From Macrostomum hystrix (Eukaryota; Animalia; Platyhelminthes): 64,000 nt of DNA. This document shows positions 29,646-41,600 of this stretch, piece after piece. Under the pieces are notes generated by a model that was not told where the DNA came from, did not search any database, and saw nothing but the letters and a program-made list of their open reading frames with translations. Each line of letters begins with the position of its first letter. The first letter of the stretch is position 1. The stretch covers positions 496,001 through 560,000 of the forward strand of contig CATNEN010000007.1 of the NCBI GenBank assembly GCA_950097015.1, in the 5' to 3' direction. The position numbers and the translations under genes are program-made.

Positions 29646-32113
29646 CCTAAAATCATAGTGATAGTTTATGGAATCAACACATTCTGGGAGTGTAGCATTC
29701 TGAGCAGTCCCTTTGTAGGCCTTATCTTATTTTGAAATTTTTTAAGTTCCAACTCTGACCTTTTACTTCTTAGCCTTCAACGCTACTGAGAGCAGTAGTG
29801 CTGAATGCGCATTTCATGTAAATGTCATTGGCATAAGGAACAAAGCAATGAGTTGGAAAATTCACAGTCGTGGAATAGAAATATAAGCTACTTCGGTATT
29901 TCTTAGTTTTGAGAGAATTCCATGAGGATTGTCACAGATTTTTCAAAGAATACCAATCGTATTCTCCTTATCCGATTGGGTCCTTTAGATTTTCTCACAT
30001 GGTGTTTCTAATCAGCGATCGATAATTCTTTAAAAAAACTTCCACATACTTTTGAGACACATTTTGAGTGGTCAAATTTGCTTTCAAGACTGAAATAAAT
30101 ACACATTTGTTCATATTTTATTCAGTCCACCTAAAATTCTAAGCTACGTCTGGAAAGTTAACACTGGTTCAGTGTAAAAAGAGGTCTAGATCACACCGGA
30201 CAGGTAAAATCAGATACATCACTACGAGCTATCATACATCTAACCATGGTTTAGCAATACCACTCTCATTGGATGCTTCCAAGACAGCTGCATCGAATAT
30301 AGCCGTATAGCTAGATGATGGAGGGAATGTTCGTCTTCCATATATGGAAACCAGGAAATACACATTGGCGTCTTGGGGCGCATAAAATAAAGGAGACACC
30401 CAAGACGCCTTTGACCAGTGACTAGCCTAACAATATTGTAAAATCTGAGAGGCACGAGTAATCTATTTGGTTTAGAAAAATTGCACAATGCCTGGAGGTT
30501 GTGTGGAGCACCTTCTCTGCCTCACCTGCGCATTCTGCTGCATTTTTAACTGTGAGTTTTGAGTCGTTCTAAACAAACCGGATCTAACAACGAGATGTAA
30601 AAACGAGCGTAGTTGTAAAAACGATTGGCATCACCATAGTTAAAATTACAAAGCTTCAGCATTATAATGATTTCTTGTTTTCTGCAGTTTAGTATGGCAT
30701 CGGCCATCTAAAAATTATTCCAAAAAGGTTCTGATTAGCACTGTACTCGAAATTTGTATAACTTGCTGCTTTTTTTCCTTGCGCTTCAAATCGAATCCAC
30801 TCGACTAATTTTATGGTTGTCCCAGTGCTTTAACTTAGTTTTCAACGTAAATTTCAAAGACATTTCAGCACTTAGCAGGGAACTTCATGCTTCTTATTAT
30901 TTTAAGCTATATTATTGAGCCGAATAATATGTAACAGATTACAGATTATATTACCCGGAGTTGAGACGTACTATATACTCGTTTAGACTAGGAAACCATA
31001 AGCTAGCTTGCGAAACATTGCGAGCTGCCAGACAGAAAGTTCCTTATGAGAATATATGATGTAGTAAGTACAAAATTGAAGTGGAAAACGAGGTCCAGTT
31101 CTTATTCAAGTGCAGTTGGAATAGTTATAGCTCATCACGTTCGAATTTCGATAATAAAATTTCAGGGCGTGAAACTCCTAATTTCACGTCCCTAACAGCA
31201 GAAGAAAAATCTAACCACATATTGGCGGCACAAGACGACAGGGAAACCACTGAAGCACTGGCCTCACCTTTGCTTCGCTAAGTACATCATCAAGAAATAT
31301 CTAAAATAAGATACCTAAGTATCTAAGATAAGATTCAGCTGCCCCGAAGCAGCTAACATTTAAATGGCAATCAGGACGATTTGTGAATTAATTTCATTCA
31401 GTTTTTCCATCGCGTCCTTTTTATACTTTTATTTTAACTCCCATCTGCTTCCCTTACCACAGAATCTTTTTCCAATTTCTTACAACACTTTGAATTTCTC
31501 TCTTCCTTGTCGATTAGTTAAGTTTTCGAAAAATATAAAAAAAATCAGGACGTACAGATGGCGTGACCATTACAAAATAAAAATAACTAAGCTATGCTTT
31601 TTTGGGAACTCTTGGTTCTCTGCTATTGGGGGGTGCATTGTTCTTCGCTGAAATGGGGGCGAACCTTGCTTATAGGGGCATTGGTTCTATGCTTAAAAGG
31701 GGCATTGTTGGTTCTCTACGAAAGGGGGCATTGTTTTTCTGCTAAAGATGAATTATTTCTTACTAGTATCACTTACATTTACTAATTAGAGATTTAGTAT
31801 AGGTGGATGAATGGATGGATAGGTTGGTTTGTTATTATTACTACTACTACAGTTGTGTTTTATTGAGTGGATTTGCTTGTTGTTATTTGAAAAAATCGAA
31901 GTAGGCTTACTAGGAGCAGTACAAGATGTACTTTTTCAAGGCACTAACTCTGTTGCAGAACTGAAAGCTTAACATGACTACAAAGCTGAGCTCATTAATC
32001 GTTATTTCTCTGCTGCTGATCGGTAAGTTAGGTGGCTTGTTCGTTGAGGTTACATACTGATATTGTTTATTAATTATATTCGCTGGTTAGACTTGCCCAT
32101 TGGGGATACATGT

Positions 32114-32347
32114 GCTCGCACCGGTGGGACACAATGCCTGTGTGGTATGAGTCAGACCAGGCCTACGGGCTAAGGTCTGCGATGCCTCACACCTGCAGTA
32201 GTTTTTTGAGCAGGTTTGGCAGGAAGGAGACCTGTGCCTCCGGGTGAAGGAATCCTCTCCACGTTGTCCCGTCAGCTGACCCATGGGTACACGTCCCGCG
32301 AGTGTTCAAGGCTGACCCTAGGGCAGCCGGACAGAATGGGCAACAGC
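32114..32347 (+). ncRNA. HDV-like self-cleaving ribozyme (predicted)
   Basis: P1 GCUCGC 32114-19 / GCGAGU 32298-303 (G1.U wobble); P2 CCCAU 32280-84 / AUGGG 32336-40; P3 GGG/CCC around L3 UACACGU (32285-97); P1.1 A32289-U32305 and C32290-G32304; P4 32306-32331; J4/2 C32332-A-G-A. Folded by eye. Confidence 0.8.
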
Positions 32348-32403
32348 GCTGGACGACCCATCCAGGGCCTCCGGCCTAACTGGGTACCTCTAGCCCCGGT
32401 TGG

Positions 32404-32745
32404 AGGGAAAGGTGTCACCCTTTGACCTTAACAGGGTATGCGGCCAGTCCGCAGCGTTCGTGCACCTGTGCGTGATCAGGTACCTCTGGCTACGGCTCTG
32501 AGGAAAAGGTGTCACCCTTTGACCTTAACAGGGTATGCGGCCAGTCCGCAGCGTTCGTGCACCTGTGCGTGATCAGGTACCTCTGGCTACGGCTCTGAGG
32601 AAAAGGTGTCACCCTTTGACCTTAACAGGGTATGCGGCCAGTCCGCAGCGTTCGTGCACCTGTGCGTGATCAGGTACCTCTGGCTTCGGCTCTGAGGGAA
32701 AGGTGTCACCCTTTGACCTTAACAGGGTATGCGGCCAGTCCGCAG
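32404..32745 (+). repeat. 97 bp monomer, about 3.5 copies, in the LINE 5' UTR
   Basis: ggtgtcaccc occurs at 32411, 32508, 32605, 32702. Confidence 0.97.
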
Positions 32746-32977: not shown

Positions 32978-34564
32978 ATGGCTTCCAGCCTACCAACTGC
33001 TCCGGCCGAGGACACCATGGTGCCCGAGGCCATACACGCTGCGGCGCCCGGGCTAGCTGGCCCCGCGACCGCCACAAATGCCGCGCTGCCCAACTCGCGC
33101 GATGACCGGGGCGCTAAGCGCTCCTCAACCTCTGGAGCGGCAAAGCGTCGTAGGCGCTTAATGGCACACGGCAAGCCGGCTCCATCGACCGAGGACCGGG
33201 CCCAGACCAGAGGGGCCGAAGGGGCTCTGCCTAGCGCGGGGGCTGGGGCGGGGGGCCTTGCGCCTCCTGCCCAGGCTCCTGCACGGGGCGGAGCCCACGA
33301 CGCCCCGAGGCCAGGGTCGCGGGCCAAGGAGGTCCCGGCGCCCATCCGGACGGCGGCTCGGCCTGAAGGAGAAGCGGAGGCAGAGGGCCCTGTGCCCACC
33401 GCCGACGCTGATCCCGAGGGTGGGGTCGCCACCGGACAGGGCCCGGGACCACATGCCACCTACGCCGCCATCGCACGTAGGCAACCTGCCGTTGTCATCA
33501 CCGGCAGAGACGGAAAAAGGCTGAGCAGCGAACAGCTCAGCAACATTTGCCGCAACATAGATGCTATGCTGTGGCAACTCCAACTGAAGGGCGAGCCCCT
33601 GGCGGTCGGCGCAAGCGCTACCAGGGAATCGTGCTTCGTCGTCTGGCCCGGCGACGCGGAATCAGGGCGGCGGCTCCTTGAGTTGCTGCCCACGCAGAGC
33701 TGGGCGGCTGGCCTCGACTTCCTCCGGGAGAACGAGCCACCAAAGACCAAGCGACACCGCATTTTCGTCCCGGCGAAAAGTGTCGTCACCAGCGCTGAGG
33801 ACCTCCGCATGGGCCTCATCGCGATGAACCGGGAGCTGCCGACAGCGGGCCTGATCGTGCACCGCACGATCCTGCGCCCCGATGGCACCGGGTTTACCGC
33901 CATTCTGGGCCTGTCCGAGCAATGGACACGCCGTTACCCAGATGGCGCCAACATCTGCATCGGTCTGTGGAAGACCAAAATCTTCGCCTTCGAGGCAGAT
34001 AAATCTCGAGGTCAGACCGGGCCCACCACCGTACCGGCCACTGAAGGGTCCTCGGACCCCGAGGTTGGGACTGGGGGCAGGGCCCAGTCGTCTCGCCAAA
34101 AAAGGCCAGAGCGTGCCATCGCTGGCAGCTCTGAGCGTCGCCCCGCGCGCATCACAAAGCGCCGGGGCCTTCTCCAGCGGGCCTCCGAGGTGGTGCGAAC
34201 CGCCAGGATGGCCCAGCTGCGCGCTGAGATGCGCGGTGGCCCACCGGGGCAGGCGCCGCAACCAAGGGCTATGGGGGAGGCCTCTAAGGTGCCCAGCTCC
34301 ATCGAGCGGGGCCCTTCGAGCGCCCCTCCCACGGCCCAGGGTGCGGTGTCGGCACCGGTTGAGGGTGACTCTGGGCCTGGGCTCAGGGCCGGGGGTGGGG
34401 ACTGGGCGGCTGACCCCGTCGAGTTCCCGCCTCTGGCTCGGGGCCGGGGCACGGAGGAGCCCATGGCTACCGACATCGACCCGGAGGAGGAGGACCGCCT
34501 TCTGGCTGAGTCCCCCTCCAAGTGCCTGCATGATGATCCCCGGAATATCATGTCTGCAAGTTAA
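32978..34564 (+). CDS. LINE ORF1 (Ala/Gly/Pro-rich, no CCHC knuckle seen)
   Basis: Open frame from 32906, first ATG at 32978; position upstream of the pol ORF. Confidence 0.8.
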   Translation: MASSLPTAPAEDTMVPEAIHAAAPGLAGPATATNAALPNSRDDRGAKRSSTSGAAKRRRRLMAHGKPAPSTEDRAQTRGAEGALPSAGAGAGGLAPPAQAPARGGAHDAPRPGSRAKEVPAPIRTAARPEGEAEAEGPVPTADADPEGGVATGQGPGPHATYAAIARRQPAVVITGRDGKRLSSEQLSNICRNIDAMLWQLQLKGEPLAVGASATRESCFVVWPGDAESGRRLLELLPTQSWAAGLDFLRENEPPKTKRHRIFVPAKSVVTSAEDLRMGLIAMNRELPTAGLIVHRTILRPDGTGFTAILGLSEQWTRRYPDGANICIGLWKTKIFAFEADKSRGQTGPTTVPATEGSSDPEVGTGGRAQSSRQKRPERAIAGSSERRPARITKRRGLLQRASEVVRTARMAQLRAEMRGGPPGQAPQPRAMGEASKVPSSIERGPSSAPPTAQGAVSAPVEGDSGPGLRAGGGDWAADPVEFPPLARGRGTEEPMATDIDPEEEDRLLAESPSKCLHDDPRNIMSAS

Positions 34565-37500
34565 CACCCAGCACTGTGTGGCAGCATCAGTCAATTTGAT
34601 GCGCACGACAGAGCGCACGATGCCGGGCCTTGTACTTGTGCAGGAGCCCTGGTTATCAAAAAACAAGCCAAGTAACATTCCTGCTGGCTATGACTGCTTC
34701 TGCATGGCAGACTCTGTCCGCCCTAGATCACTGATCTATGCTGCAAAAGCCTTAAATGCGTGGATGAGACCCGATCTCTCTAACGGGGACATCTGCGTCA
34801 TCCAATCTGCACACATTGTGCCCAACAAGTTGACCCTCGTGGCATCCGCCTACCTGGCAGGCGACGCCCCCGTGGTCAGCGATACCCTCGTCGCCCTCTG
34901 TGATTTCGCCAGGGCACGAAATTTTGAGCTGCTCCTCGCGGGAGATGCAAACTCGCATCACACCCACTGGGGTAGCTCAAAAATCAATGACCGCGGCGAA
35001 GAGCTCCTGGCCTTCGTTAGCGGCACGCCTCTTAACTTCTGCAATGTGGGCAACACGCCCACGTTCGACAATGGGCGGTGGGCTGAGGTGCTTGACGTCA
35101 CCCTGGCCTCACCCGGCATCCTCCCAAGGGTGCTGGGGTGGGAGGTGTGGGAGACCGAAAGCTCGCTCTCGGACCACCGCTTCATTCGCTTCAACATCGG
35201 TACCCCCGATAAGAAGCAAAAGCCTATCTGGAGGCGTAATGTCAGAAACACCGACTGGCCCGTGTTCAGCCAAAAGCTGCATGAGGGCCTTCGGGATTCC
35301 GACCCCTCCATGGCCATGGCAACCACGCAGGACCTAGATGGAGTGGCTGCCCTGCTGGGCGGCGCCATCACAGAGGCCTACGAAATGGCTTGCCCGCTCA
35401 AAGCCTACAAAGGCAAAAAATCGGCCCCCTGGTGGAACCCCGAGCTCGGAGTCCTGAGACGCCGAGCAAAGGCTCTCCAGAGGAGGCTGAAAATCTCGCA
35501 CGACCCTGATGACAAAGAGGCCTATACTCGCGCCATCCATGAGTTTAAGGGCCGGGTCAGAAGGGCAAAAGCGGACAAGTGGCGGCAATACTGCGAAGGG
35601 CTTGAGGGCTCGCGGCCCACGGCCCGCGTGGTAAAGGCGCTCACCAACGACCGCTTCTCCAAGCTCTCATCGATCAAAAAGCCAGACGGTTCGATCACGG
35701 AGCGCCCGGAGGAAACGCTCGAGCTTATGCTAGGGCATTTCTTCCCGAGTGTACCGGCGCACTTTGGCCCAGACGACCACTCACGTGGAGGTCAGGGCCT
35801 GGCTCAGTCACTCGTCACGAATGACCGCATCGTTCGCGCGGCAAAGTCATTCAACCCTTTCAAAGCACCTGGGCCAGATGGTATTTATCCGGCCTTTTTG
35901 CATGAAGCGGTCAAAAATGGCCGCTTCCTCCATCTCCTCTGCAGACTTCTACGGGCCTGCATCGTGCTGGGCTATGTACCAGCGCTGTGGCACGAAGCCC
36001 GGGTCGTCTTCATCCCGAAGCCCGCCAAAGGCGACTATCGCTCGGTCAAGTCCTATCGCCCGATAAGTTTGACTTCCACCTGCCTCAAGCTCATGGAAAG
36101 ACTGGTGCTTTGGCGCCTTCTTACTGTAGAGCTAGGGCGGGCCCCGCTCTCCCCAAACCAGCACGCCTTTCGGGCGGGCCGGTCCACGGAGAGCGCCCTC
36201 CACTGCATCGTGGAGACTCTCGAGAAGGCAGTGCTGGGCAGCGGTTTTGCCCTGGCTGTCTTCCTAGACATTGAGGGGGCCTTCGATAACGTTGTTTTCG
36301 AAGCTTTTGAGGAGGCCCTGGTCTCCAGGGCCACTCACCCCCACCTCGTTCGCTGGGTCATGTACATGATCCGGCATCGCCACGTGGTGGCCCACCTCGA
36401 AGGAAGGCTGCTCTCGGCACCTGTCCTAAAAGGAGGGCCCCAAGGCGGCGTCCTCACCCCACTGCTGTGGAATCTCGTCATGGATGAGCTGCTGAAAAGC
36501 ACTCGTCCAGACCCAGTCCTGAAGGTGGGATATGCCGACGATGTGACCGCCATCTGCGCGGGCCCCTCGGCGGAAACCACCAGAGACCTCATCCAGGGCT
36601 TTATCAACAGGGCGGTGCGCTGGGCGGACCAATGCGGGCTCCGACTCTCTGAGTCCAAGACCGTTGCGGTTATGTTTACCAGCAAACTGCTCTGGACCAT
36701 TAAGCCTCTGACTCTCTATGGCAAGAATATTGCCATGGAAAAGCAGGTCCGGTGCCTTGGTCTCGTGCTAGACCATAGGCTTAACTGGACCCCACACATC
36801 ACCACAAAGGCCAAGAGGGCCCTGGCCATACTGGCGCAAGTCAGGCGTGCCGTGGGCACCACCTGGGGGCTAACCCCCAAGAACCTTTGGTGGATTTACA
36901 CGGCGATCATTAGACCGTCCGTCGCTTACGCTGGCCTCATCTGGGCCAGCGCCATGGGCATCCAGAAAAACCTGGAGGCACTTTATAGGGTGCAGGGCAG
37001 AGCCTGTCGTATGACGCTGGGCGCCCCACCCTCCACTCCCTTCGAAGGCATGAATGCTTTCCTCAACGCTACACCCATTGACATTTTCGTCAAGGGGGAA
37101 GCAGCAAAGTCCACCCGTCGTCTTCTTGATGCGGGTGTCTCCTTCCAGAATTCGCGAGCCTTCTCGAAGCGCTCCCTTCTGCCTCACTCTGACCTCTGCC
37201 TGAAAACTCTGGGCGAGTGCGGAGGGCTCACCATCCTTTCGGACGGGGCCCCGGCCACTTTACTCCGGAGCCACAGGTACAAAGTCAGCATCTCCCCTCG
37301 TAATGAGGTAAAGGACTGCTGGGATGACCCGGCAGTCCACTGTTACACTGACGGCTCTCTGATGAACGGTAAATCGGGATTCGGAGTGTGCGTCGCCTCG
37401 GGTGGTGAGGTCCTCTGGACCCACTCCCAATACTGTGGCAAGAGCTCTAGCGTTTTCCAAAACGAAGTGCTCGCCATCAGCTTCTGTGCGGCTGAGCTGC

Positions 37501-38234
37501 GCCAGAGGCAGCTGGCTGGTCGGAGGATCTTTTTTCACTCCGACAGTCAAGCAGCCCTCAAGGCCCTCAGCCGCTGCACCTCTCGCTCCAGAACCACCTT
37601 GGACTGCAACACCCAGTTAAACGGGTTGGCGCAGTCTAACAAGGTGGAGCTGCTGTGGATCCCTGGGCATGCCGGGTTCACAGGGAATGAGATGGCGGAC
37701 CAGCTTGCTAAGGCTGGAGCAGCCAGCTCCCTGATGGGCCCGGGCCCGGAGTCCCCGATCCCCATCTCAGTTGTCAACTCCAGCATCAACTGCTGGATGG
37801 AGACCCAGCACCGGAGGAGGTGGTCCAGCACCCTGAACTGTCGCCTGTCCAGGGCTGCGGTGCCAACCCCCTCTAGTAACCTGCGTAAGGCCTTACTCAG
37901 GCTTAACCGCAGAGACCTAAGAGCAGTCACTATGGCTCTTTCGGGACATGGCTGCTTCACCAGACACCGCTACCTTCAAGGCCACGTGCCTGAGGAAACG
38001 TGTCCCTTCTGCTGCTCCGGACGCGAAAATGCAGAGCATTTCATCTGCCACTGCCCGGCCTTCACCCGGGCCAGGCTAAAACATCTCGGGCCGGCACCGA
38101 CTCTCGCCGAAGCCTGCTCGCCCGAGAACATCCCACAGCTCGCCCACTTCCTCCGGGATACCGGCCGAGCTGATTTCTTCCCAGCCTATGGCGAGGAAGA
38201 TCGCGCGGCGGAATCGACCGACGGACCACCCTGA
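34530..38234 (+). CDS. LINE ORF2: APE endonuclease, reverse transcriptase, RNase H, C-terminal CCHC
   Basis: LQVNTQH, LVQEPW, GDANSHH, DVTL, SDHRFI (APE); KAPGPDGI, YRPISL, FLDIEGAFD, GGPQGGVLTP, GYADDV (RT); YTDGS, QNEVLAI, HSDSQAAL, WIPGHAG, GNEMAD (RNase H); CPFC...ENAEHFICHC. No stops. ATG 34530 overlaps the ORF1 end by 35 nt. Confidence 0.97.
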   Translation: MMIPGISCLQVNTQHCVAASVNLMRTTERTMPGLVLVQEPWLSKNKPSNIPAGYDCFCMADSVRPRSLIYAAKALNAWMRPDLSNGDICVIQSAHIVPNKLTLVASAYLAGDAPVVSDTLVALCDFARARNFELLLAGDANSHHTHWGSSKINDRGEELLAFVSGTPLNFCNVGNTPTFDNGRWAEVLDVTLASPGILPRVLGWEVWETESSLSDHRFIRFNIGTPDKKQKPIWRRNVRNTDWPVFSQKLHEGLRDSDPSMAMATTQDLDGVAALLGGAITEAYEMACPLKAYKGKKSAPWWNPELGVLRRRAKALQRRLKISHDPDDKEAYTRAIHEFKGRVRRAKADKWRQYCEGLEGSRPTARVVKALTNDRFSKLSSIKKPDGSITERPEETLELMLGHFFPSVPAHFGPDDHSRGGQGLAQSLVTNDRIVRAAKSFNPFKAPGPDGIYPAFLHEAVKNGRFLHLLCRLLRACIVLGYVPALWHEARVVFIPKPAKGDYRSVKSYRPISLTSTCLKLMERLVLWRLLTVELGRAPLSPNQHAFRAGRSTESALHCIVETLEKAVLGSGFALAVFLDIEGAFDNVVFEAFEEALVSRATHPHLVRWVMYMIRHRHVVAHLEGRLLSAPVLKGGPQGGVLTPLLWNLVMDELLKSTRPDPVLKVGYADDVTAICAGPSAETTRDLIQGFINRAVRWADQCGLRLSESKTVAVMFTSKLLWTIKPLTLYGKNIAMEKQVRCLGLVLDHRLNWTPHITTKAKRALAILAQVRRAVGTTWGLTPKNLWWIYTAIIRPSVAYAGLIWASAMGIQKNLEALYRVQGRACRMTLGAPPSTPFEGMNAFLNATPIDIFVKGEAAKSTRRLLDAGVSFQNSRAFSKRSLLPHSDLCLKTLGECGGLTILSDGAPATLLRSHRYKVSISPRNEVKDCWDDPAVHCYTDGSLMNGKSGFGVCVASGGEVLWTHSQYCGKSSSVFQNEVLAISFCAAELRQRQLAGRRIFFHSDSQAALKALSRCTSRSRTTLDCNTQLNGLAQSNKVELLWIPGHAGFTGNEMADQLAKAGAASSLMGPGPESPIPISVVNSSINCWMETQHRRRWSSTLNCRLSRAAVPTPSSNLRKALLRLNRRDLRAVTMALSGHGCFTRHRYLQGHVPEETCPFCCSGRENAEHFICHCPAFTRARLKHLGPAPTLAEACSPENIPQLAHFLRDTGRADFFPAYGEEDRAAESTDGPP

Positions 38235-38353
38235 GCGGCACCGCCTCGCTGGAGGCTGTCTGGCTGCCAGGGGTTAGCGATATGGGCGGCACCAGCCGCC
38301 TCCTCGCTGCGTCCGTCATGGAGGCTCCCTGCCGCTAAGTCAAGCAAGTCAAA

Positions 38354-38600
38354 GGGGATACATGTGCAACATAGCACAGCCGTAGCTATTGCGCGGCTCA
38401 TCTAAAGGCAGCATACAGCTGTTCAGTCCATGGACCGGGGGCCACACCTACCCTCAATTACCAGCTTTACAGCTGTGTGAACTGAAGAAATGCTGAGTGA
38501 GTTGTCCTGCGAATGGGCACGAGTTGTTCCAGCGAAGTCGGAATCGAACCCCGACCTTCAAGTCGATTAGTTTGAGAAAACCACTAGGCTACAAACCCTG
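38354..38600 (-). mobile_element. SINE-like family B copy whose 3' tail was split by the LINE
   Basis: The joined pre-insertion sequence acttgcccattggggatacatgtgcaacatagcacagcc aligns with the 23875 copy (acctgcccctatcggggcacgtgtgcagctgacagcacagc). B-box ggaatcgaac at ~38540. Confidence 0.65.
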
Positions 38601-41600
38601 ATTTAATATAATTTTATTTAAAAAGGAGTTCTTCTCACATCTGTGCTATTAATTATTTATTAAACATTTTCAGCTACTGCCAGGTCTGAAGATCAGCACT
38701 GCATCCACAACGAAGAAAATGTCATTAGAGTCATAATTGGTGATCACAACCCACAGAGGGTGAGTAGTATGTTGCAAACGGCCTTTATCGACCAGAAAAT
38801 AAGAAATCCTTAGAATAAAAGATTCTTATGTACTGAGTACGTAAGCGATGCCTTAAGAATAGCCAAGTAGGCGAGTTTTATTAGCACCCAGTTGGGTCAG
38901 ATTTGCAGCCAATGACAATAGACTGCGCTTCCAAAGGCTGTGTGCCTGTACGTGGACTGAGGAGGCCGCGACTCCCCACAAATTTTTTTATCCGAGCTAA
39001 TGCTGGCACTAGTTATATAGATGGTTAAATGTGAAGAAAATGCTATTTAAACGACTTGCTCAACCTCCAAGACACATTTAGAGCCAGGATAAAAGATAGC
39101 TGCGTCTGTTTCAGGTGATGACGTATGTCCGAGATGATCCGGGCTATACGAAGAACCTGGAGTGCACGTGGACTCTGAAGGCGATCAACTATGACCAGCC
39201 CAGATAGATGTACATTGACGTGCCCGTGGTGGACTTTGACAACAATATTGACCCGTTTTGCAACAAAACCGACGTGTTCAGCTTCTGGCATAAGTACAAC
39301 GAGAGTGAGTGGCTTGGCTTAAGACAAAAGTTTCCTCTAAGTTTCCTCTCAACCCTCGACAATTCAACACTCGTATTTAGGAGAAATCATTTATAGTAAT
39401 TTATCTAAAACTCCGAGTCACAGAGTAATTCCGTCGGCTTTCGATGCAAATTAAAACTCTAACGTGGAAGTACAAGCCGGCAATGTGTGACTTTTTATCA
39501 AGGAAAATGTGGTGCTTTCGTTTTGGCTTTACGAGTATAATTTTATTACTCTATAAATATAGCGAACATCTCTGTTTAATTATTATTGAGTATTCACAAC
39601 AGCTGCTATCAGCCGACTGCACACATTTCAGCTGCTTGGCGGCGGGAGTCCTTGTGCAGTGAATCGTCCGTGTCACGCAGTTTCCGATTCTTGCCGTTTA
39701 GACGGCAAATAATCAACTTGTGGGACCCGTGAGTAGTACTGCAGCTTCTTACTGAGCTCTCTTATCAGAATGCGAGTTGAGACCCTGCTGCTTCACTACC
39801 CACTTCACTCTGCAGGTCGTACTACCTGACTGTGGAATTCCAGTCTGACAATGAGCAAGTCCGCTCCGATGCCAAGGGATTGCAGATGGATGTGCAGGTA
39901 CTGGGCAGAGATTTTTGCCACAGGAACATGCTGTATCTCGATGACTACTGCTACCTGGTCACTCCTGAGAATGTGTCGCTAGCTCAATCCAATCAGGTTG
40001 GAAAACTCTACCTCGGCAACTTTTTCACTGTCCGAAACGCCTCTTCTGGCCGGGATATCTTAAACTTTCTGACTAGATTCTCGGAGAGAAGTACGCATTT
40101 CTTTTTCGAATTTCTGATGAGAGTATTTATGCTCAATTGTGCTCAATATTGTCATCGATTTGAATACCTCTTTGCGCTTCCCTCAGACAAAGCCAGGATA
40201 GGCGAGTTTCCTTACGAGTCGCCACTGGCCCTGACTAATCTCAGAGTGTGGACCGGCTACTTTGTGAACGAATCCTCCTTCAGCGAGGAGGACCCGGTCA
40301 TGTTTTACTCAGATCCGATAGACGACTGCTGCATTGTCAAGCAAGTGAAAGTGTGAGTGCTGCTTCTCTATTGTGAGTCTAGTCTAAATGATATTGTAAA
40401 TATCATTTGGTATAGAATGTCAATCATTCGATTTCAGGACTCGTGAGATTTTGACCGGCTGTAATAAAAACCCAGCGCCTGTAGCCCTTAATTGGCTTAG
40501 CAACGGCAGCGTGCATTTTTGCTGTGTGCCAGACAGCGATTCGATGCCAGCTCTGATCCAGTTCAGCCAGATTCCTGAAACCAAGGGCGATCTGCACCCG
40601 CAGCTGTTCAACACCTGCGACATCGCGCTGCCAACAACAACTACGACTCCGGAACCAACATTCACGCACAACCAGCACTGCATGCACAAGACAACCCAAC
40701 ACTGTCACTCATGCACAGATACATCGAGCAGCTCATGGACTGCAACTCAGCCCCTGGATGTGAAAGAGGGCGAGGCCATCTCACTCTCTGTGACGTCAGT
40801 CGGTGGGAATCCTGCACCCAGTCATGAGTGCTGGCTGCAGGTGGCTGGCAGTCAAAACATCCGCATGAATGTGACGCATGCGAGAAATGCGACTTCTCCG
40901 CACACTCAGGATATTCCACAGCTGGAACTCGTCACCAACTTCAGCTCGACATCCAGCAGACGAATCAACGGAGGCTCTGTGATGTGCAGAGTGAGTCAGG
41001 GCAGTGCGGCGGATCTGCTGAGCAACTTCAATCAGAGTGTCAACGTATTCTGTGAGTTCATGAGGAACTCCTTAAAGAATGTACACTTTTACCTACTGGA
41101 TGCCCTTTACATTTTCAAATCACTTGATGATCGAATCCTGACTCCTCAGACCAGCCTCCCAAACCAGAAATCACCGGCTTGCAGACATCTAACATCTACG
41201 AAAACGTTACAAAAATCTTCTCGGTCACATCGGGTGACGGGAATCCGAAAGTGACTCACAAATGCAGCGCTGACCACGGCCTGATTGTGAGCTGCTTTCC
41301 ATTTACTATTTCAAGCGTAAAGCTATTTGAACATAATATAAACTGCCCTCATTATCACAAAACTGGCAATATTTCAGAGTCAGCAATTCAAGCAAAGTCG
41401 TGTCAAAAAGAGTTACAACAGAAGTGAGTTTCCATTCGCATAGACAGAGCAGCACCATTCAGTGCTCAGCTGAGCAAACTCTAAACTCACAGACCTTGTT
41501 CAACAGCAGCACCGCAGTGGTCTTACAAGTGAACTGTGAGACTAAACTCACTGTGTTGTCTCTGCTTCTGATTGAACTTTGTTATAAGCATGCCAGACAG

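What the first reader, a model, noticed from the sequence alone, without database searches (positions are those of the whole stretch)
32114..32347. HDV-like self-cleaving ribozyme at the 5' end of a full-length LINE
Seen: the first ~235 nt of the element form every helix of the nested double pseudoknot. P1 is GCUCGC/GCGAGU, opening with the G1.U wobble. P2 is CCCAU/AUGGG, extended by GCUG/CAGC. P3 is GGG/CCC around a 7-nt L3 UACACGU that retains the U20/G25 pair. P1.1 is AC/GU, P4 is a long stem, and J4/2 is C-A-G-A with C32332 at the catalytic position. The predicted scissile G32114 lies within 2 nt of the TSD-defined 5' boundary, and those 2 nt (GC) are junction microhomology. A 155-nt J1/2 insert is itself closed by GGGACA/UGUCCC and carries a C(UACG)G hairpin. 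Established: HDV-like ribozymes process the 5' ends of R2, RTE, L1Tc and some LOA-clade elements. Inference: this is an active member with unusual features (6-bp P1, an A-U pair in P1.1 compensating the L3 change, a large J1/2 domain) in a non-insect lineage.
Basis: partly seen in the sequence, partly recalled or inferred. Interest (0 to 1): 0.9.

Follow-up and report, generated by a model that had tools for sequence, protein, structure and literature searches.

The report
HDV-like ribozyme heading a flatworm LINE
The first 234 bases of an intact jumping gene (a LINE) in a Macrostomum-like flatworm genome fold into the hepatitis-delta-type self-cutting RNA shape, and related elements keep that shape through matched base changes. 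It is very probably a real ribozyme that trims the element's RNA to its exact first base, which is a known trick seen here in a new LINE family.

Summary

- **Specificity.** A strict HDV-like descriptor hits the 128 kb of both strands once, at G32114. It gave 0 hits in 60 shuffled windows and 1 in 300 shuffles of the GC-rich element.
- **Position.** G32114 lies at the 5' boundary of an intact 6.2-kb LINE set by a 14-bp target-site duplication. The LINE has ORF1 and an ORF2 with endonuclease, reverse transcriptase and RNase H domains.
- **Covariation.** A relative, L001 (ORF2 62% identical, ORF1 35%), has the same colinear architecture. Of 29 pairs in P1, P1.1, P1.2, P2, its extension and P3, 14 changed on both sides and none broke. 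Its contig begins exactly at G1.
- **Further support.** A third family (L006) and two M. lignano gene models that translate through the core also fit the fold. The J4/2 cytosine is kept in all three DNA sequences.

Self-cleavage was not tested.

The features called unusual are documented: 6-bp P1, a structured J1/2 with extended P2 in Agam-2, and J1/2 of 216-498 nt in R2. Only the covarying A-U/U-A P1.1 and a near-invariant 43-nt hairpin in J1/2 stand out.

Verdict: a new member of a known kind. This scan has already noted the same kind of ribozyme at other LINE 5' ends in this genome.

The parts
32102..32115 (+). 5' copy of the 14-bp target-site duplication GGGGATACATGTGC. Its last two bases (GC, 32114-32115) double as G1-C2 of the ribozyme, which is junction microhomology.
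   Evidence: exactly 2 matches in the window, 0 expected. L001 also starts GC..., so GC belongs to the element.
32114..32119 (+). P1 5' strand GCUCGC. The predicted scissile bond is immediately 5' of G32114.
32120..32274 (+). J1/2 peripheral domain (155 nt). It has a 3-nt linker, a 9-bp closing stem P1.2 (32123-32131 with 32265-32273), internal hairpins and a 1-nt linker.
   Evidence: P1.2 has 5 both-side changes against L001, and RNAalifold independently finds its outer 5 bp.
32144..32186 (+). Near-invariant hairpin inside J1/2 (GGUAUGAG..GACCAGGCC-UACG-GGGCUAAGGUC..CGAUGCC). 37 of 43 bases are identical to L001.
32275..32284 (+). P2 extension 5' strand GCUG, a bulged A, and P2 5' strand CCCAU.
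32285..32297 (+). P3 (GGG/CCC) enclosing L3 UACACGU. U32288 and G32293 are the U20/G25 equivalents. A32289-C32290 form P1.1.
   Evidence: P3 and the L3 pattern U...CGU are invariant in window, L001 and L006.
32298..32305 (+). P1 3' strand GCGAGU followed by P1.1 3' strand GU.
32306..32331 (+). P4 hairpin (UC-AA-GGCUG...CAGCC-G-GA).
   Evidence: Length and sequence vary among relatives while a stem is kept. A Q/L swap in M. lignano model P0135 fits a U-A to A-U flip.
32332..32335 (+). J4/2 CAGA. C32332 is the candidate catalytic cytosine (C75 equivalent).
   Evidence: J4/2 is CAGA in the window, CUGC in L001 and CUGA in L006, so the C is kept in 3 of 3.
32336..32347 (+). P2 3' strand AUGGG, conserved CAA bulge, and P2 extension 3' strand CAGC.
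32978..34564 (+). ORF1 (528 aa from the first ATG). It has a DUF4780-like central domain in relatives.
34530..38234 (+). ORF2 (about 1234 aa) with AP endonuclease, reverse transcriptase and RNase H domains. It is uninterrupted and overlaps the ORF1 end by about 35 nt.
38354..38367 (+). 3' copy of the target-site duplication. The element ends at 38353 (...GCTAAGTCAAGCAAGTCAAA).

Best explanation
Bases 32114-32347 encode an HDV-like (delta-type) self-cleaving ribozyme. It forms the 5' end of an intact, TSD-flanked LINE (endonuclease, RT and RNase H) in a Macrostomum-like flatworm.

Proposed mechanism:
1. The element sits in sense orientation about 90 nt downstream of a putative exon-1 splice donor. 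It can therefore be transcribed as part of the host pre-mRNA, or from any upstream promoter. This step is inferred.
2. The nascent RNA folds into the nested double pseudoknot P1/P1.1/P2/P3/P4. The 155-nt J1/2 domain, closed by a 9-bp P1.2 with linkers of only 3 and 1 nt, and the extended P2 hold P1 and P2 together. This is the 'pinch' architecture. The fold is shown by covariation.
3. C32332 in J4/2, with Mg2+, catalyses attack of the 2'-OH of U32113 on the phosphate 5' of G32114. That releases element RNA beginning with a 5'-OH G1. This step is inferred from established HDV ribozyme chemistry and was not tested.
4. Full-length target-primed reverse transcription of that RNA yields copies that begin exactly at G1 and regenerate the ribozyme. 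This is consistent with the TSD boundary here and with the L001 contig start.
For: - **Specificity.** The descriptor hits once in the window on both strands, at 32114. It gave 0 hits in 60 window shuffles and 1 in 300 element shuffles. A descriptor with A, G or U in place of the J4/2 C gives 0 hits.
- **Position.** The 14-bp TSD places the element 5' end at 32114-32116. The ORFs are intact.
- **Relative L001.** L001 (ORF2 62% identical, ORF1 35%) has the same architecture at the same spacing.
- **Covariation.** Of 29 pairs, 14 changed on both sides, 2 on one side, 13 are the same and 0 are broken. The both-side changes are 2 in P1, both pairs of P1.1, 4 in P2, 1 in the P2 extension and 5 in P1.2. 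The register is unique.
- **L001 start.** L001's only descriptor hit starts at contig base 1, although the contig runs about 540 nt past the element's 3' end.
- **Other families.** L006, a third family, keeps P2, the P2 extension, P3, L3, P4 and J4/2 CUGA. M. lignano gene models P0135 and P0134 translate through a homologous core (tblastn E 4e-9).
- **Energetics.** The two nested halves of the pseudoknot fold within 4-6 kcal/mol (window) and 1-2 kcal/mol (L001) of the unconstrained MFE.
- **Literature.** The same role and similar architectures are documented (PMC4908430; PMC3774820; PMC6765202).
Against: - There is no biochemical or RNA-end evidence, and the library type of the run behind L001 is unknown.
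- No Rfam HDV-type model matches, even at E<=10. The 155-nt J1/2 insertion plausibly prevents a match.
- Only two complete sequences and one 5'-truncated DNA sequence were available, and the helices in L001 were first located by eye.
- L001 has J4/2 CUGC, lacking the usual final A, and a G1-C pair instead of G1.U.
- L006 has a U-U mismatch in P1.1.
- More distant relatives (ORF2 31-37% identical: L002-L004, L011, L012) show no convincing motif. L003 gave only one weak relaxed-descriptor hit.
Confidence: 0.85

Rival explanations
1. The conserved 5' double-pseudoknot is a structural RNA element that no longer self-cleaves or never did, for example a binding site for the element's proteins, an IRES or a packaging signal. 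On this view the element's 5' end is set by an internal promoter that starts transcription at G1.
For: - The most conserved part is the J1/2 hairpin (37 of 43 identical), not the catalytic core.
- The R2 protein binds a pseudoknot within the R2 ribozyme region, and HDV-like ribozymes are proposed to aid translation (PMC6765202).
- L1Tc combines a promoter and a ribozyme in the same 77 nt (abstracts).
- The TSD boundary and the contig start would also fit a fixed transcription start.
Against: - All hallmarks specific to catalysis are kept across families: G1 at the base of P1, the L3 pattern U...CGU, a covarying P1.1, and C at J4/2 position 1 in 3 of 3 sequences.
- A mere binding scaffold has no need for the exact HDV topology.
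- The two functions are not exclusive.
Confidence: 0.1
2. It is a chance match: a GC-rich 5' UTR with a permissive 155-nt gap lets an HDV-like drawing be made by accident.
For: - The descriptor was tuned to this case (6-bp P1, 5-bp P2, J1/2 up to 250 nt).
- Relaxed descriptors give spurious hits elsewhere.
- Rfam finds nothing.
Against: - Shuffles give 0 hits in 7.7 Mb of window shuffles and 1 hit in 3.7 Mb of element shuffles.
- The hit coincides with the TSD-defined 5' end.
- An element with only 35% ORF1 identity has the same fold, with 14 compensatory pairs and 0 breaks, starting at contig base 1.
Confidence: 0.03

Closest known systems
drz-Agam-2 HDV-like ribozymes of Anopheles gambiae (Webb et al. 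2016, PMC4908430)
   Same: Both have a nested double pseudoknot with a structured J1/2 domain (P1.2) joined by short linkers, and a P2 extended beyond about 7 bp. This 'pinch' architecture accelerates cleavage. P1 of 6-7 bp is normal.
   Different: Here J1/2 is a 155-nt multi-helix domain with a near-invariant 43-nt hairpin. The host is a flatworm LINE with ORF1 and an ORF2 carrying endonuclease, RT and RNase H. There is no sequence similarity detectable by Rfam models.
R2 (and R4/Dong) element ribozymes (Eickbush & Eickbush; PMC3774820)
   Same: An HDV-like ribozyme at the LINE 5' end processes the element out of a co-transcript. J1/2 loops are very large (216-498 nt in silkmoths). P3, L3 and P1.1 are conserved while P1 covaries. 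R2 also occurs in a flatworm, the planarian Schmidtea.
   Different: R2 is a site-specific rDNA element with one ORF and a restriction-like endonuclease. It is transcribed by Pol I and often cleaves upstream in 28S. The present element is dispersed, TSD-flanked, carries an AP-type endonuclease and RNase H, and its cut site is the element's first base.
L1TcRz of Trypanosoma cruzi L1Tc/ingi elements (PMC3185411, PMC4035085)
   Same: It belongs to a dispersed LINE with AP endonuclease, RT and RNase H, flanked by TSDs of about 12 bp. Its HDV-like ribozyme starts at nucleotide 1 and releases the element from long co-transcripts.
   Different: L1TcRz is compact (77 nt), overlaps the Pr77 internal promoter and occurs in a protist. 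Here the ribozyme spans 234 nt because of the J1/2 domain, and no promoter function has been shown.
Baggins1 (LOA clade, Drosophila) 5' ribozyme
   Same: It belongs to a non-site-specific insect LINE whose HDV-like ribozyme cleaves at the element 5' end (PMC3774820). LOA/I-type elements also carry RNase H (my own knowledge).
   Different: Clade membership of the present element was not tested against reference LINEs. The host phylum also differs.

Membership tests
HDV-like (delta-type) self-cleaving ribozymes | Nested double-pseudoknot topology: P1, P2, P3 and P4 in the canonical order, with P1.1 between L3 and the bases 3' of P1. | tested here: met
   The descriptor hits once in the window. 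The parts were parsed. Every helix is complete only in its own register.
HDV-like (delta-type) self-cleaving ribozymes | Catalytic cytosine at the first position of J4/2. | tested here: met
   C32332 is in that position. The C is kept in window, L001 and L006. Descriptors with A, G or U there give 0 hits.
HDV-like (delta-type) self-cleaving ribozymes | Cleavage site at the first nucleotide (G) of P1. | tested here: inconclusive
   G32114 is at the TSD-defined 5' end, and L001's contig starts at its G1. These positions fit, but no cleavage product was observed.
HDV-like (delta-type) self-cleaving ribozymes | Conserved L3 core: U at position 1 and G at position 6 (the U20/G25 equivalents), preceded by C. 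| tested here: met
   L3 is UACACGU in the window, UCUCCGU in L001 and UUCCCGU in L006. The U20/G25 role rests on my own knowledge of the HDV structures.
HDV-like (delta-type) self-cleaving ribozymes | Helices supported by compensatory changes among homologues. | tested here: met
   14 both-side changes and 0 broken among 29 pairs, window against L001. RNAalifold independently supports P1.2 and the J1/2 hairpins. The sample is small, at 2-3 sequences.
HDV-like (delta-type) self-cleaving ribozymes | Mg2+-dependent self-scission abolished by changing the catalytic C to U. | not testable with these tools
   This is a bench assay.
Curated Rfam HDV-type families (HDV_ribozyme, CPEB3, drz-Agam and others) | Match to a family covariance model at or near the gathering score. 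| tested here: not met
   There is no match at gathering or at E<=10 on 32000-32500, and none in L001 or L006. It is therefore not a member of any curated sequence family. The 155-nt J1/2 insert plausibly blocks the models.
LOA/I-type LINE clade | ORF2 groups with LOA/I reference elements in an RT phylogeny. | not tested
   Only the domain order was established: AP endonuclease, RT and RNase H, with a DUF4780-like ORF1 in relatives. No reference LINE sequences were available.

The most novel reading that the evidence does not exclude
The near-invariant 43-nt hairpin inside J1/2 (32144-32186) may be a second functional module nested in the ribozyme. It is 37 of 43 bases identical between elements whose ORF1 is only 35% identical and whose ribozyme helices are heavily substituted. 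It could be a recognition site for the element's own ORF1 or ORF2 protein, by analogy with R2 protein binding a pseudoknot in the R2 ribozyme region. It could also be an IRES or promoter element. Either way, the 5' ribozyme would double as a processing and cis-preference signal in a non-site-specific LINE.
Probability: 0.3. Interest if true: 0.55.

Novelty: new member of a known kind. Interest (0 to 1): 0.4.

Why it matters
It extends HDV-like 5'-end processing to a family of dispersed LINEs with RNase H in free-living flatworms. In the literature I could search, the only ribozymes tied to flatworm retroelements were the R2 HDV-like ribozyme in planaria, twister variants in Schistosoma LINEs, and hammerheads in Schistosoma SINEs.

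It also offers a natural covariation series for P1.1 (A-U/C-G against C-G/U-A) and for the 'pinch' P1.2 domain.

This copy lies in sense inside a putative first intron, so an active ribozyme would cut the host pre-mRNA. That effect on host gene expression is testable. For annotation, it explains why M. lignano gene models wrongly translate through LINE 5' UTRs.

Tried and rejected
- **Rfam.** Searches at gathering and at E<=10 found no match.
- **Other copies in the window.** There are none.
- **Metagenome scans.** The conserved J1/2 pattern gave 0 hits. An ORF1 alignment gave 151 pattern matches, none confirmed.
- **Other collections, same pattern.** Viral contigs gave 0 hits. Bacterial genomes gave 3 hits, which is chance level (about 1 expected), and none lie in a known RNA.
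- **ORF1 homologue searches.** They gave few relatives:
  - L005 starts inside the 5'-UTR tandem repeat and lacks the ribozyme.
  - L007 has only coding-like sequence upstream.
  - P0131 and P0135 are not on record.
  - P0002's contig has no DNA available.
- **Distant relatives.** L002-L004, L011 and L012 gave no convincing HDV motif by relaxed descriptor or Rfam. L003 gave one weak candidate with a competing hairpin, which I did not accept.
- **Covariance model.** I did not build one. MAFFT alignments of the core were not structural, and the full length would exceed the calibration limit. Pair counts were made by script instead.
- **Nested MFE folding.** It cannot represent the pseudoknot and gave only z = -1.76.
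- **Tetraloop receptor.** I considered reading CUAAG/UAUGA in the J1/2 hairpin as a GAAA-tetraloop receptor. I dropped it because the strands do not face each other that way in the predicted fold and no GNRA loop is available.
- **Papers.** Ruminski 2011 and Webb 2009 are not held.

Full report
**Observation**

- P1 is GCUCGC (32114-32119) paired with GCGAGU (32298-32303), opening with G1.U.
- P2 is CCCAU (32280-32284) paired with AUGGG (32336-32340). It is extended across an A/CAA internal loop by GCUG (32275-32278) paired with CAGC (32344-32347).
- P3 is GGG/CCC around the 7-nt L3 UACACGU (32288-32294).
- P1.1 is A32289-C32290 paired with G32304-U32305.
- P4 spans 32306-32331. It is a modest hairpin of about 7-9 bp, not a long stem.
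- J4/2 is CAGA, with C32332 first.
- J1/2 is 155 nt. Its closing stem is longer than stated: 9 bp, GGUGGGACA/UGUCCCGUC. Only 3 nt and 1 nt link it to P1 and P2.

**The element**

GGGGATACATGTGC occurs exactly twice in the window, at 32102-32115 and 38354-38367, with none expected by chance. It brackets a 6.2-kb element ending ...GCTAAGTCAAGCAAGTCAAA.

The element carries ORF1 (32978-34564). It also carries an uninterrupted ORF2 (ATG at 34530, ending at 38234) with AP endonuclease, reverse transcriptase and RNase H domains.

The best named relatives of both ORFs are Macrostomum lignano proteins, at 50-75% identity over the parts they cover. The host is therefore a Macrostomum-like flatworm but probably not M. 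lignano itself.

The last two TSD bases, GC, are also G1-C2 of P1. The relative L001 also begins GC..., so these bases belong to the element and the overlap is junction microhomology.

**More than chance**

I wrote a descriptor with these requirements:
- G-initiated 6-bp P1, and J1/2 of at most 250 nt;
- 5-bp P2 abutting a 3-bp Watson-Crick P3;
- 7-nt L3 with U at position 1 and G at position 6;
- 2-bp Watson-Crick P1.1;
- J4/2 of the form CNRA.

It hits the window once on both strands, at 32114.
- It gave 0 hits in 60 dinucleotide shuffles of the window (7.7 Mb) and 1 hit in 300 shuffles of the 62%-GC element.
- Replacing the J4/2 C by A, G or U gives 0 hits. This follows the false-positive control used for theta ribozymes (PMC10879173).
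- Sliding any 3' strand by 1-3 nt destroys the helix.

The descriptor was tuned to this case. The decisive evidence is therefore comparative.

**Relatives**

The window holds no second copy. The ORF2 search led to Logan contig L001 (run ERR14788467). Its ORF2 is 62% identical to the window's and its ORF1 only 35%.

Its first 244 nt have the same parts at the same spacing: P1 at 1-6, P1.2 at 11-19 with 154-162, then the P2 extension, P2, P3, L3, P1 3' strand, P1.1, P4, J4/2 and P2 3' strand.

Pair by pair against the window:

| Helix | Window | L001 | Pairs changed on both sides |
|---|---|---|---|
| P1 | GCUCGC/GCGAGU | GCCUGC/GCAGGC | 2 (plus G.U to G-C) |
| P1.1 | A-U, C-G | C-G, U-A | 2 (both pairs) |
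| P2 | CCCAU/AUGGG | CUCAGA/UCUGAG | 4 |
| P2 extension | GCUG/CAGC | GCCG/CGGC | 1 |
| P1.2 | GGUGGGACA/UGUCCCGUC | GCAGGGCGC/GCGCUCUGC | 5 |

In total, 14 of 29 pairs changed on both sides, 2 changed on one side, 13 are the same and none is broken. P3, the L3 pattern U...CGU, the C and G of J4/2 and the CAA bulge are invariant.

RNAalifold, run without my helix assignments, also finds the outer part of P1.2 and the J1/2 hairpins with compensatory changes.

With J4/2 relaxed to CNRN, L001 has a single descriptor hit, at contig base 1. Only 5 of 300 shuffles gave any hit anywhere in 13 kb.

L001 runs about 540 nt beyond the element's 3' end (...GCTAAGTCAAAG) yet has no 5' flank at all. The start could reflect an RNA 5' end or a repeat boundary in the assembly. 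Either way it marks G1 as the first base of that element.

Other families:
- **L006.** A third family from the same run (ORF1 38% identical). Its contig lacks about the first 80 nt. It still shows P2 CCUCAGA/UCUGAGG, extension GUCG/CGGC, P3 GGG/CCC, L3 UUCCCGU, a different P4 stem and J4/2 CUGA. It has one U-U mismatch in P1.1.
- **M. lignano models.** Two gene models, P0135 (A0A1I8IE52) and P0134 (A0A1I8JA99), translate straight through a homologous core. tblastn against the window 5' UTR gives E 4e-9 and 9e-6. A Leu-to-Gln change on one P4 strand and a Gln-to-Leu change on the other fit a U-A to A-U flip. This is indirect evidence, at the amino-acid level only.

**Energetics**

Nested folding cannot represent the pseudoknot. 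Forcing either nested half, P1+P1.2+P3+P4 or P2+extension+P3+P4, costs only 4-6 kcal/mol in the window and 1-2 kcal/mol in L001 relative to the MFE. The omitted helices are worth 8-11 kcal/mol. The full fold is therefore plausible.

**Mechanism**

The element lies in sense about 90 nt downstream of what reads as exon 1 of a host gene. That exon has its ATG at 31975, a signal-peptide-like sequence and GTAAGT at 32025.

I infer the following sequence of events:
1. Co-transcription with the host gene.
2. Folding, helped by the P1.2/extended-P2 'pinch' described for Agam-2 ribozymes (PMC4908430).
3. Cleavage 5' of G32114, dependent on C32332 and Mg2+, leaving a 5'-OH.
4. Reverse transcription of the trimmed RNA, so that new copies begin at G1.

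The fold and its position are shown. The chemistry and the in vivo use are inferred from established HDV, R2 and L1Tc work (PMC3774820, PMC3185411, PMC6765202).

**Comparison and novelty**

- 6- or 7-bp P1 helices and structured J1/2 domains with extended P2;
- J1/2 loops of 216-498 nt in silkmoth R2;
- HDV-like ribozymes in R2 of planaria, birds, tunicates and cnidarians, and 5'-end cleavage in R4, Dong, Baggins and L1Tc.

It matches no curated Rfam family. I found no paper on HDV-like ribozymes in Macrostomum or in non-R2 flatworm LINEs in the held library. It is therefore a new member of a known kind.

Earlier notes of this scan report the same type (226-234 nt) and a short type (66-68 nt) at other LINE 5' ends in this genome. 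I could not read those sequences, so they count as agreement and not as evidence.

**What remains odd**

Within J1/2, the hairpin 32144-32186 is 37 of 43 bases identical to L001. The whole ribozyme is only about 60% identical, and the rest of J1/2 about 53%. A helix that merely pinches P1 and P2 together would not need that much sequence constraint. A second function, such as protein binding, an IRES or a DNA-level promoter, is possible and untested.

**Limits**

- Only two complete ribozyme sequences and one truncated one could be retrieved, and all capped look-ups are spent.
- More distant relatives (ORF2 31-37% identical) showed no convincing motif. The breadth of the ribozyme within the clade is therefore unknown.
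- L001's J4/2 is CUGC and its first pair is G1-C. L006 has a P1.1 mismatch. These particular copies may be less active.

Noticed in passing
window 32403-32745: A 97-nt unit is repeated 3.5 times (98% identical) in the LINE 5' UTR, downstream of the ribozyme. The same unit heads contig L005, the closest ORF1 relative, where the assembly breaks inside it. L001 appears by eye to hold one diverged copy, around 300-400.
   Followed up: partly
window 32349-32365: A hairpin sits directly 3' of the ribozyme: CUGGA-CGACCCA-UCCAG. Its stem changes in relatives (L006 CCGG/CCGG, L001 GCU/AGC by eye) while the ACCCA loop is kept. It may be a further conserved 5'-UTR module.
   Followed up: no
window 32225-32380 against proteins P0135 and P0134: M. 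lignano UniProt gene models A0A1I8IE52 and A0A1I8JA99 contain a conceptual translation of the LINE 5' UTR and ribozyme core, fused to ORF1-like sequence and to host domains. These are probably chimeric mis-annotations.
   Followed up: partly
window 31975-32030 and 38660-38765: A putative exon 1 (ATG at 31975, signal-peptide-like, donor GTAAGT at 32025) and a putative exon 2 (acceptor near 38671, donor GTGAGT near 38760) flank the LINE in sense orientation. CUB-like coding sequence follows near 39110-39300. An active ribozyme would sever this host pre-mRNA within intron 1.
   Followed up: partly
window about 38515-38600, minus strand: This stretch contains a tRNA T-arm-like motif (GGTTCGATTCC as reverse complement). 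ARAGORN and Rfam call no tRNA here. It may be a decayed tRNA-derived SINE or a tRNA pseudogene just 3' of the LINE.
   Followed up: partly
window 34530-34564: The ORF2 start (ATG ATG at 34530) overlaps the end of ORF1 by about 35 nt in another frame. In relative L001 the two ORFs are separated by 24 nt.
   Followed up: no
L001 5954-6492, minus strand: The 3' flank of the L001 element carries open reading frames called on the opposite strand (142 aa and 37 aa). I did not check whether this is a host gene or whether the contig is transcript-derived.
   Followed up: no
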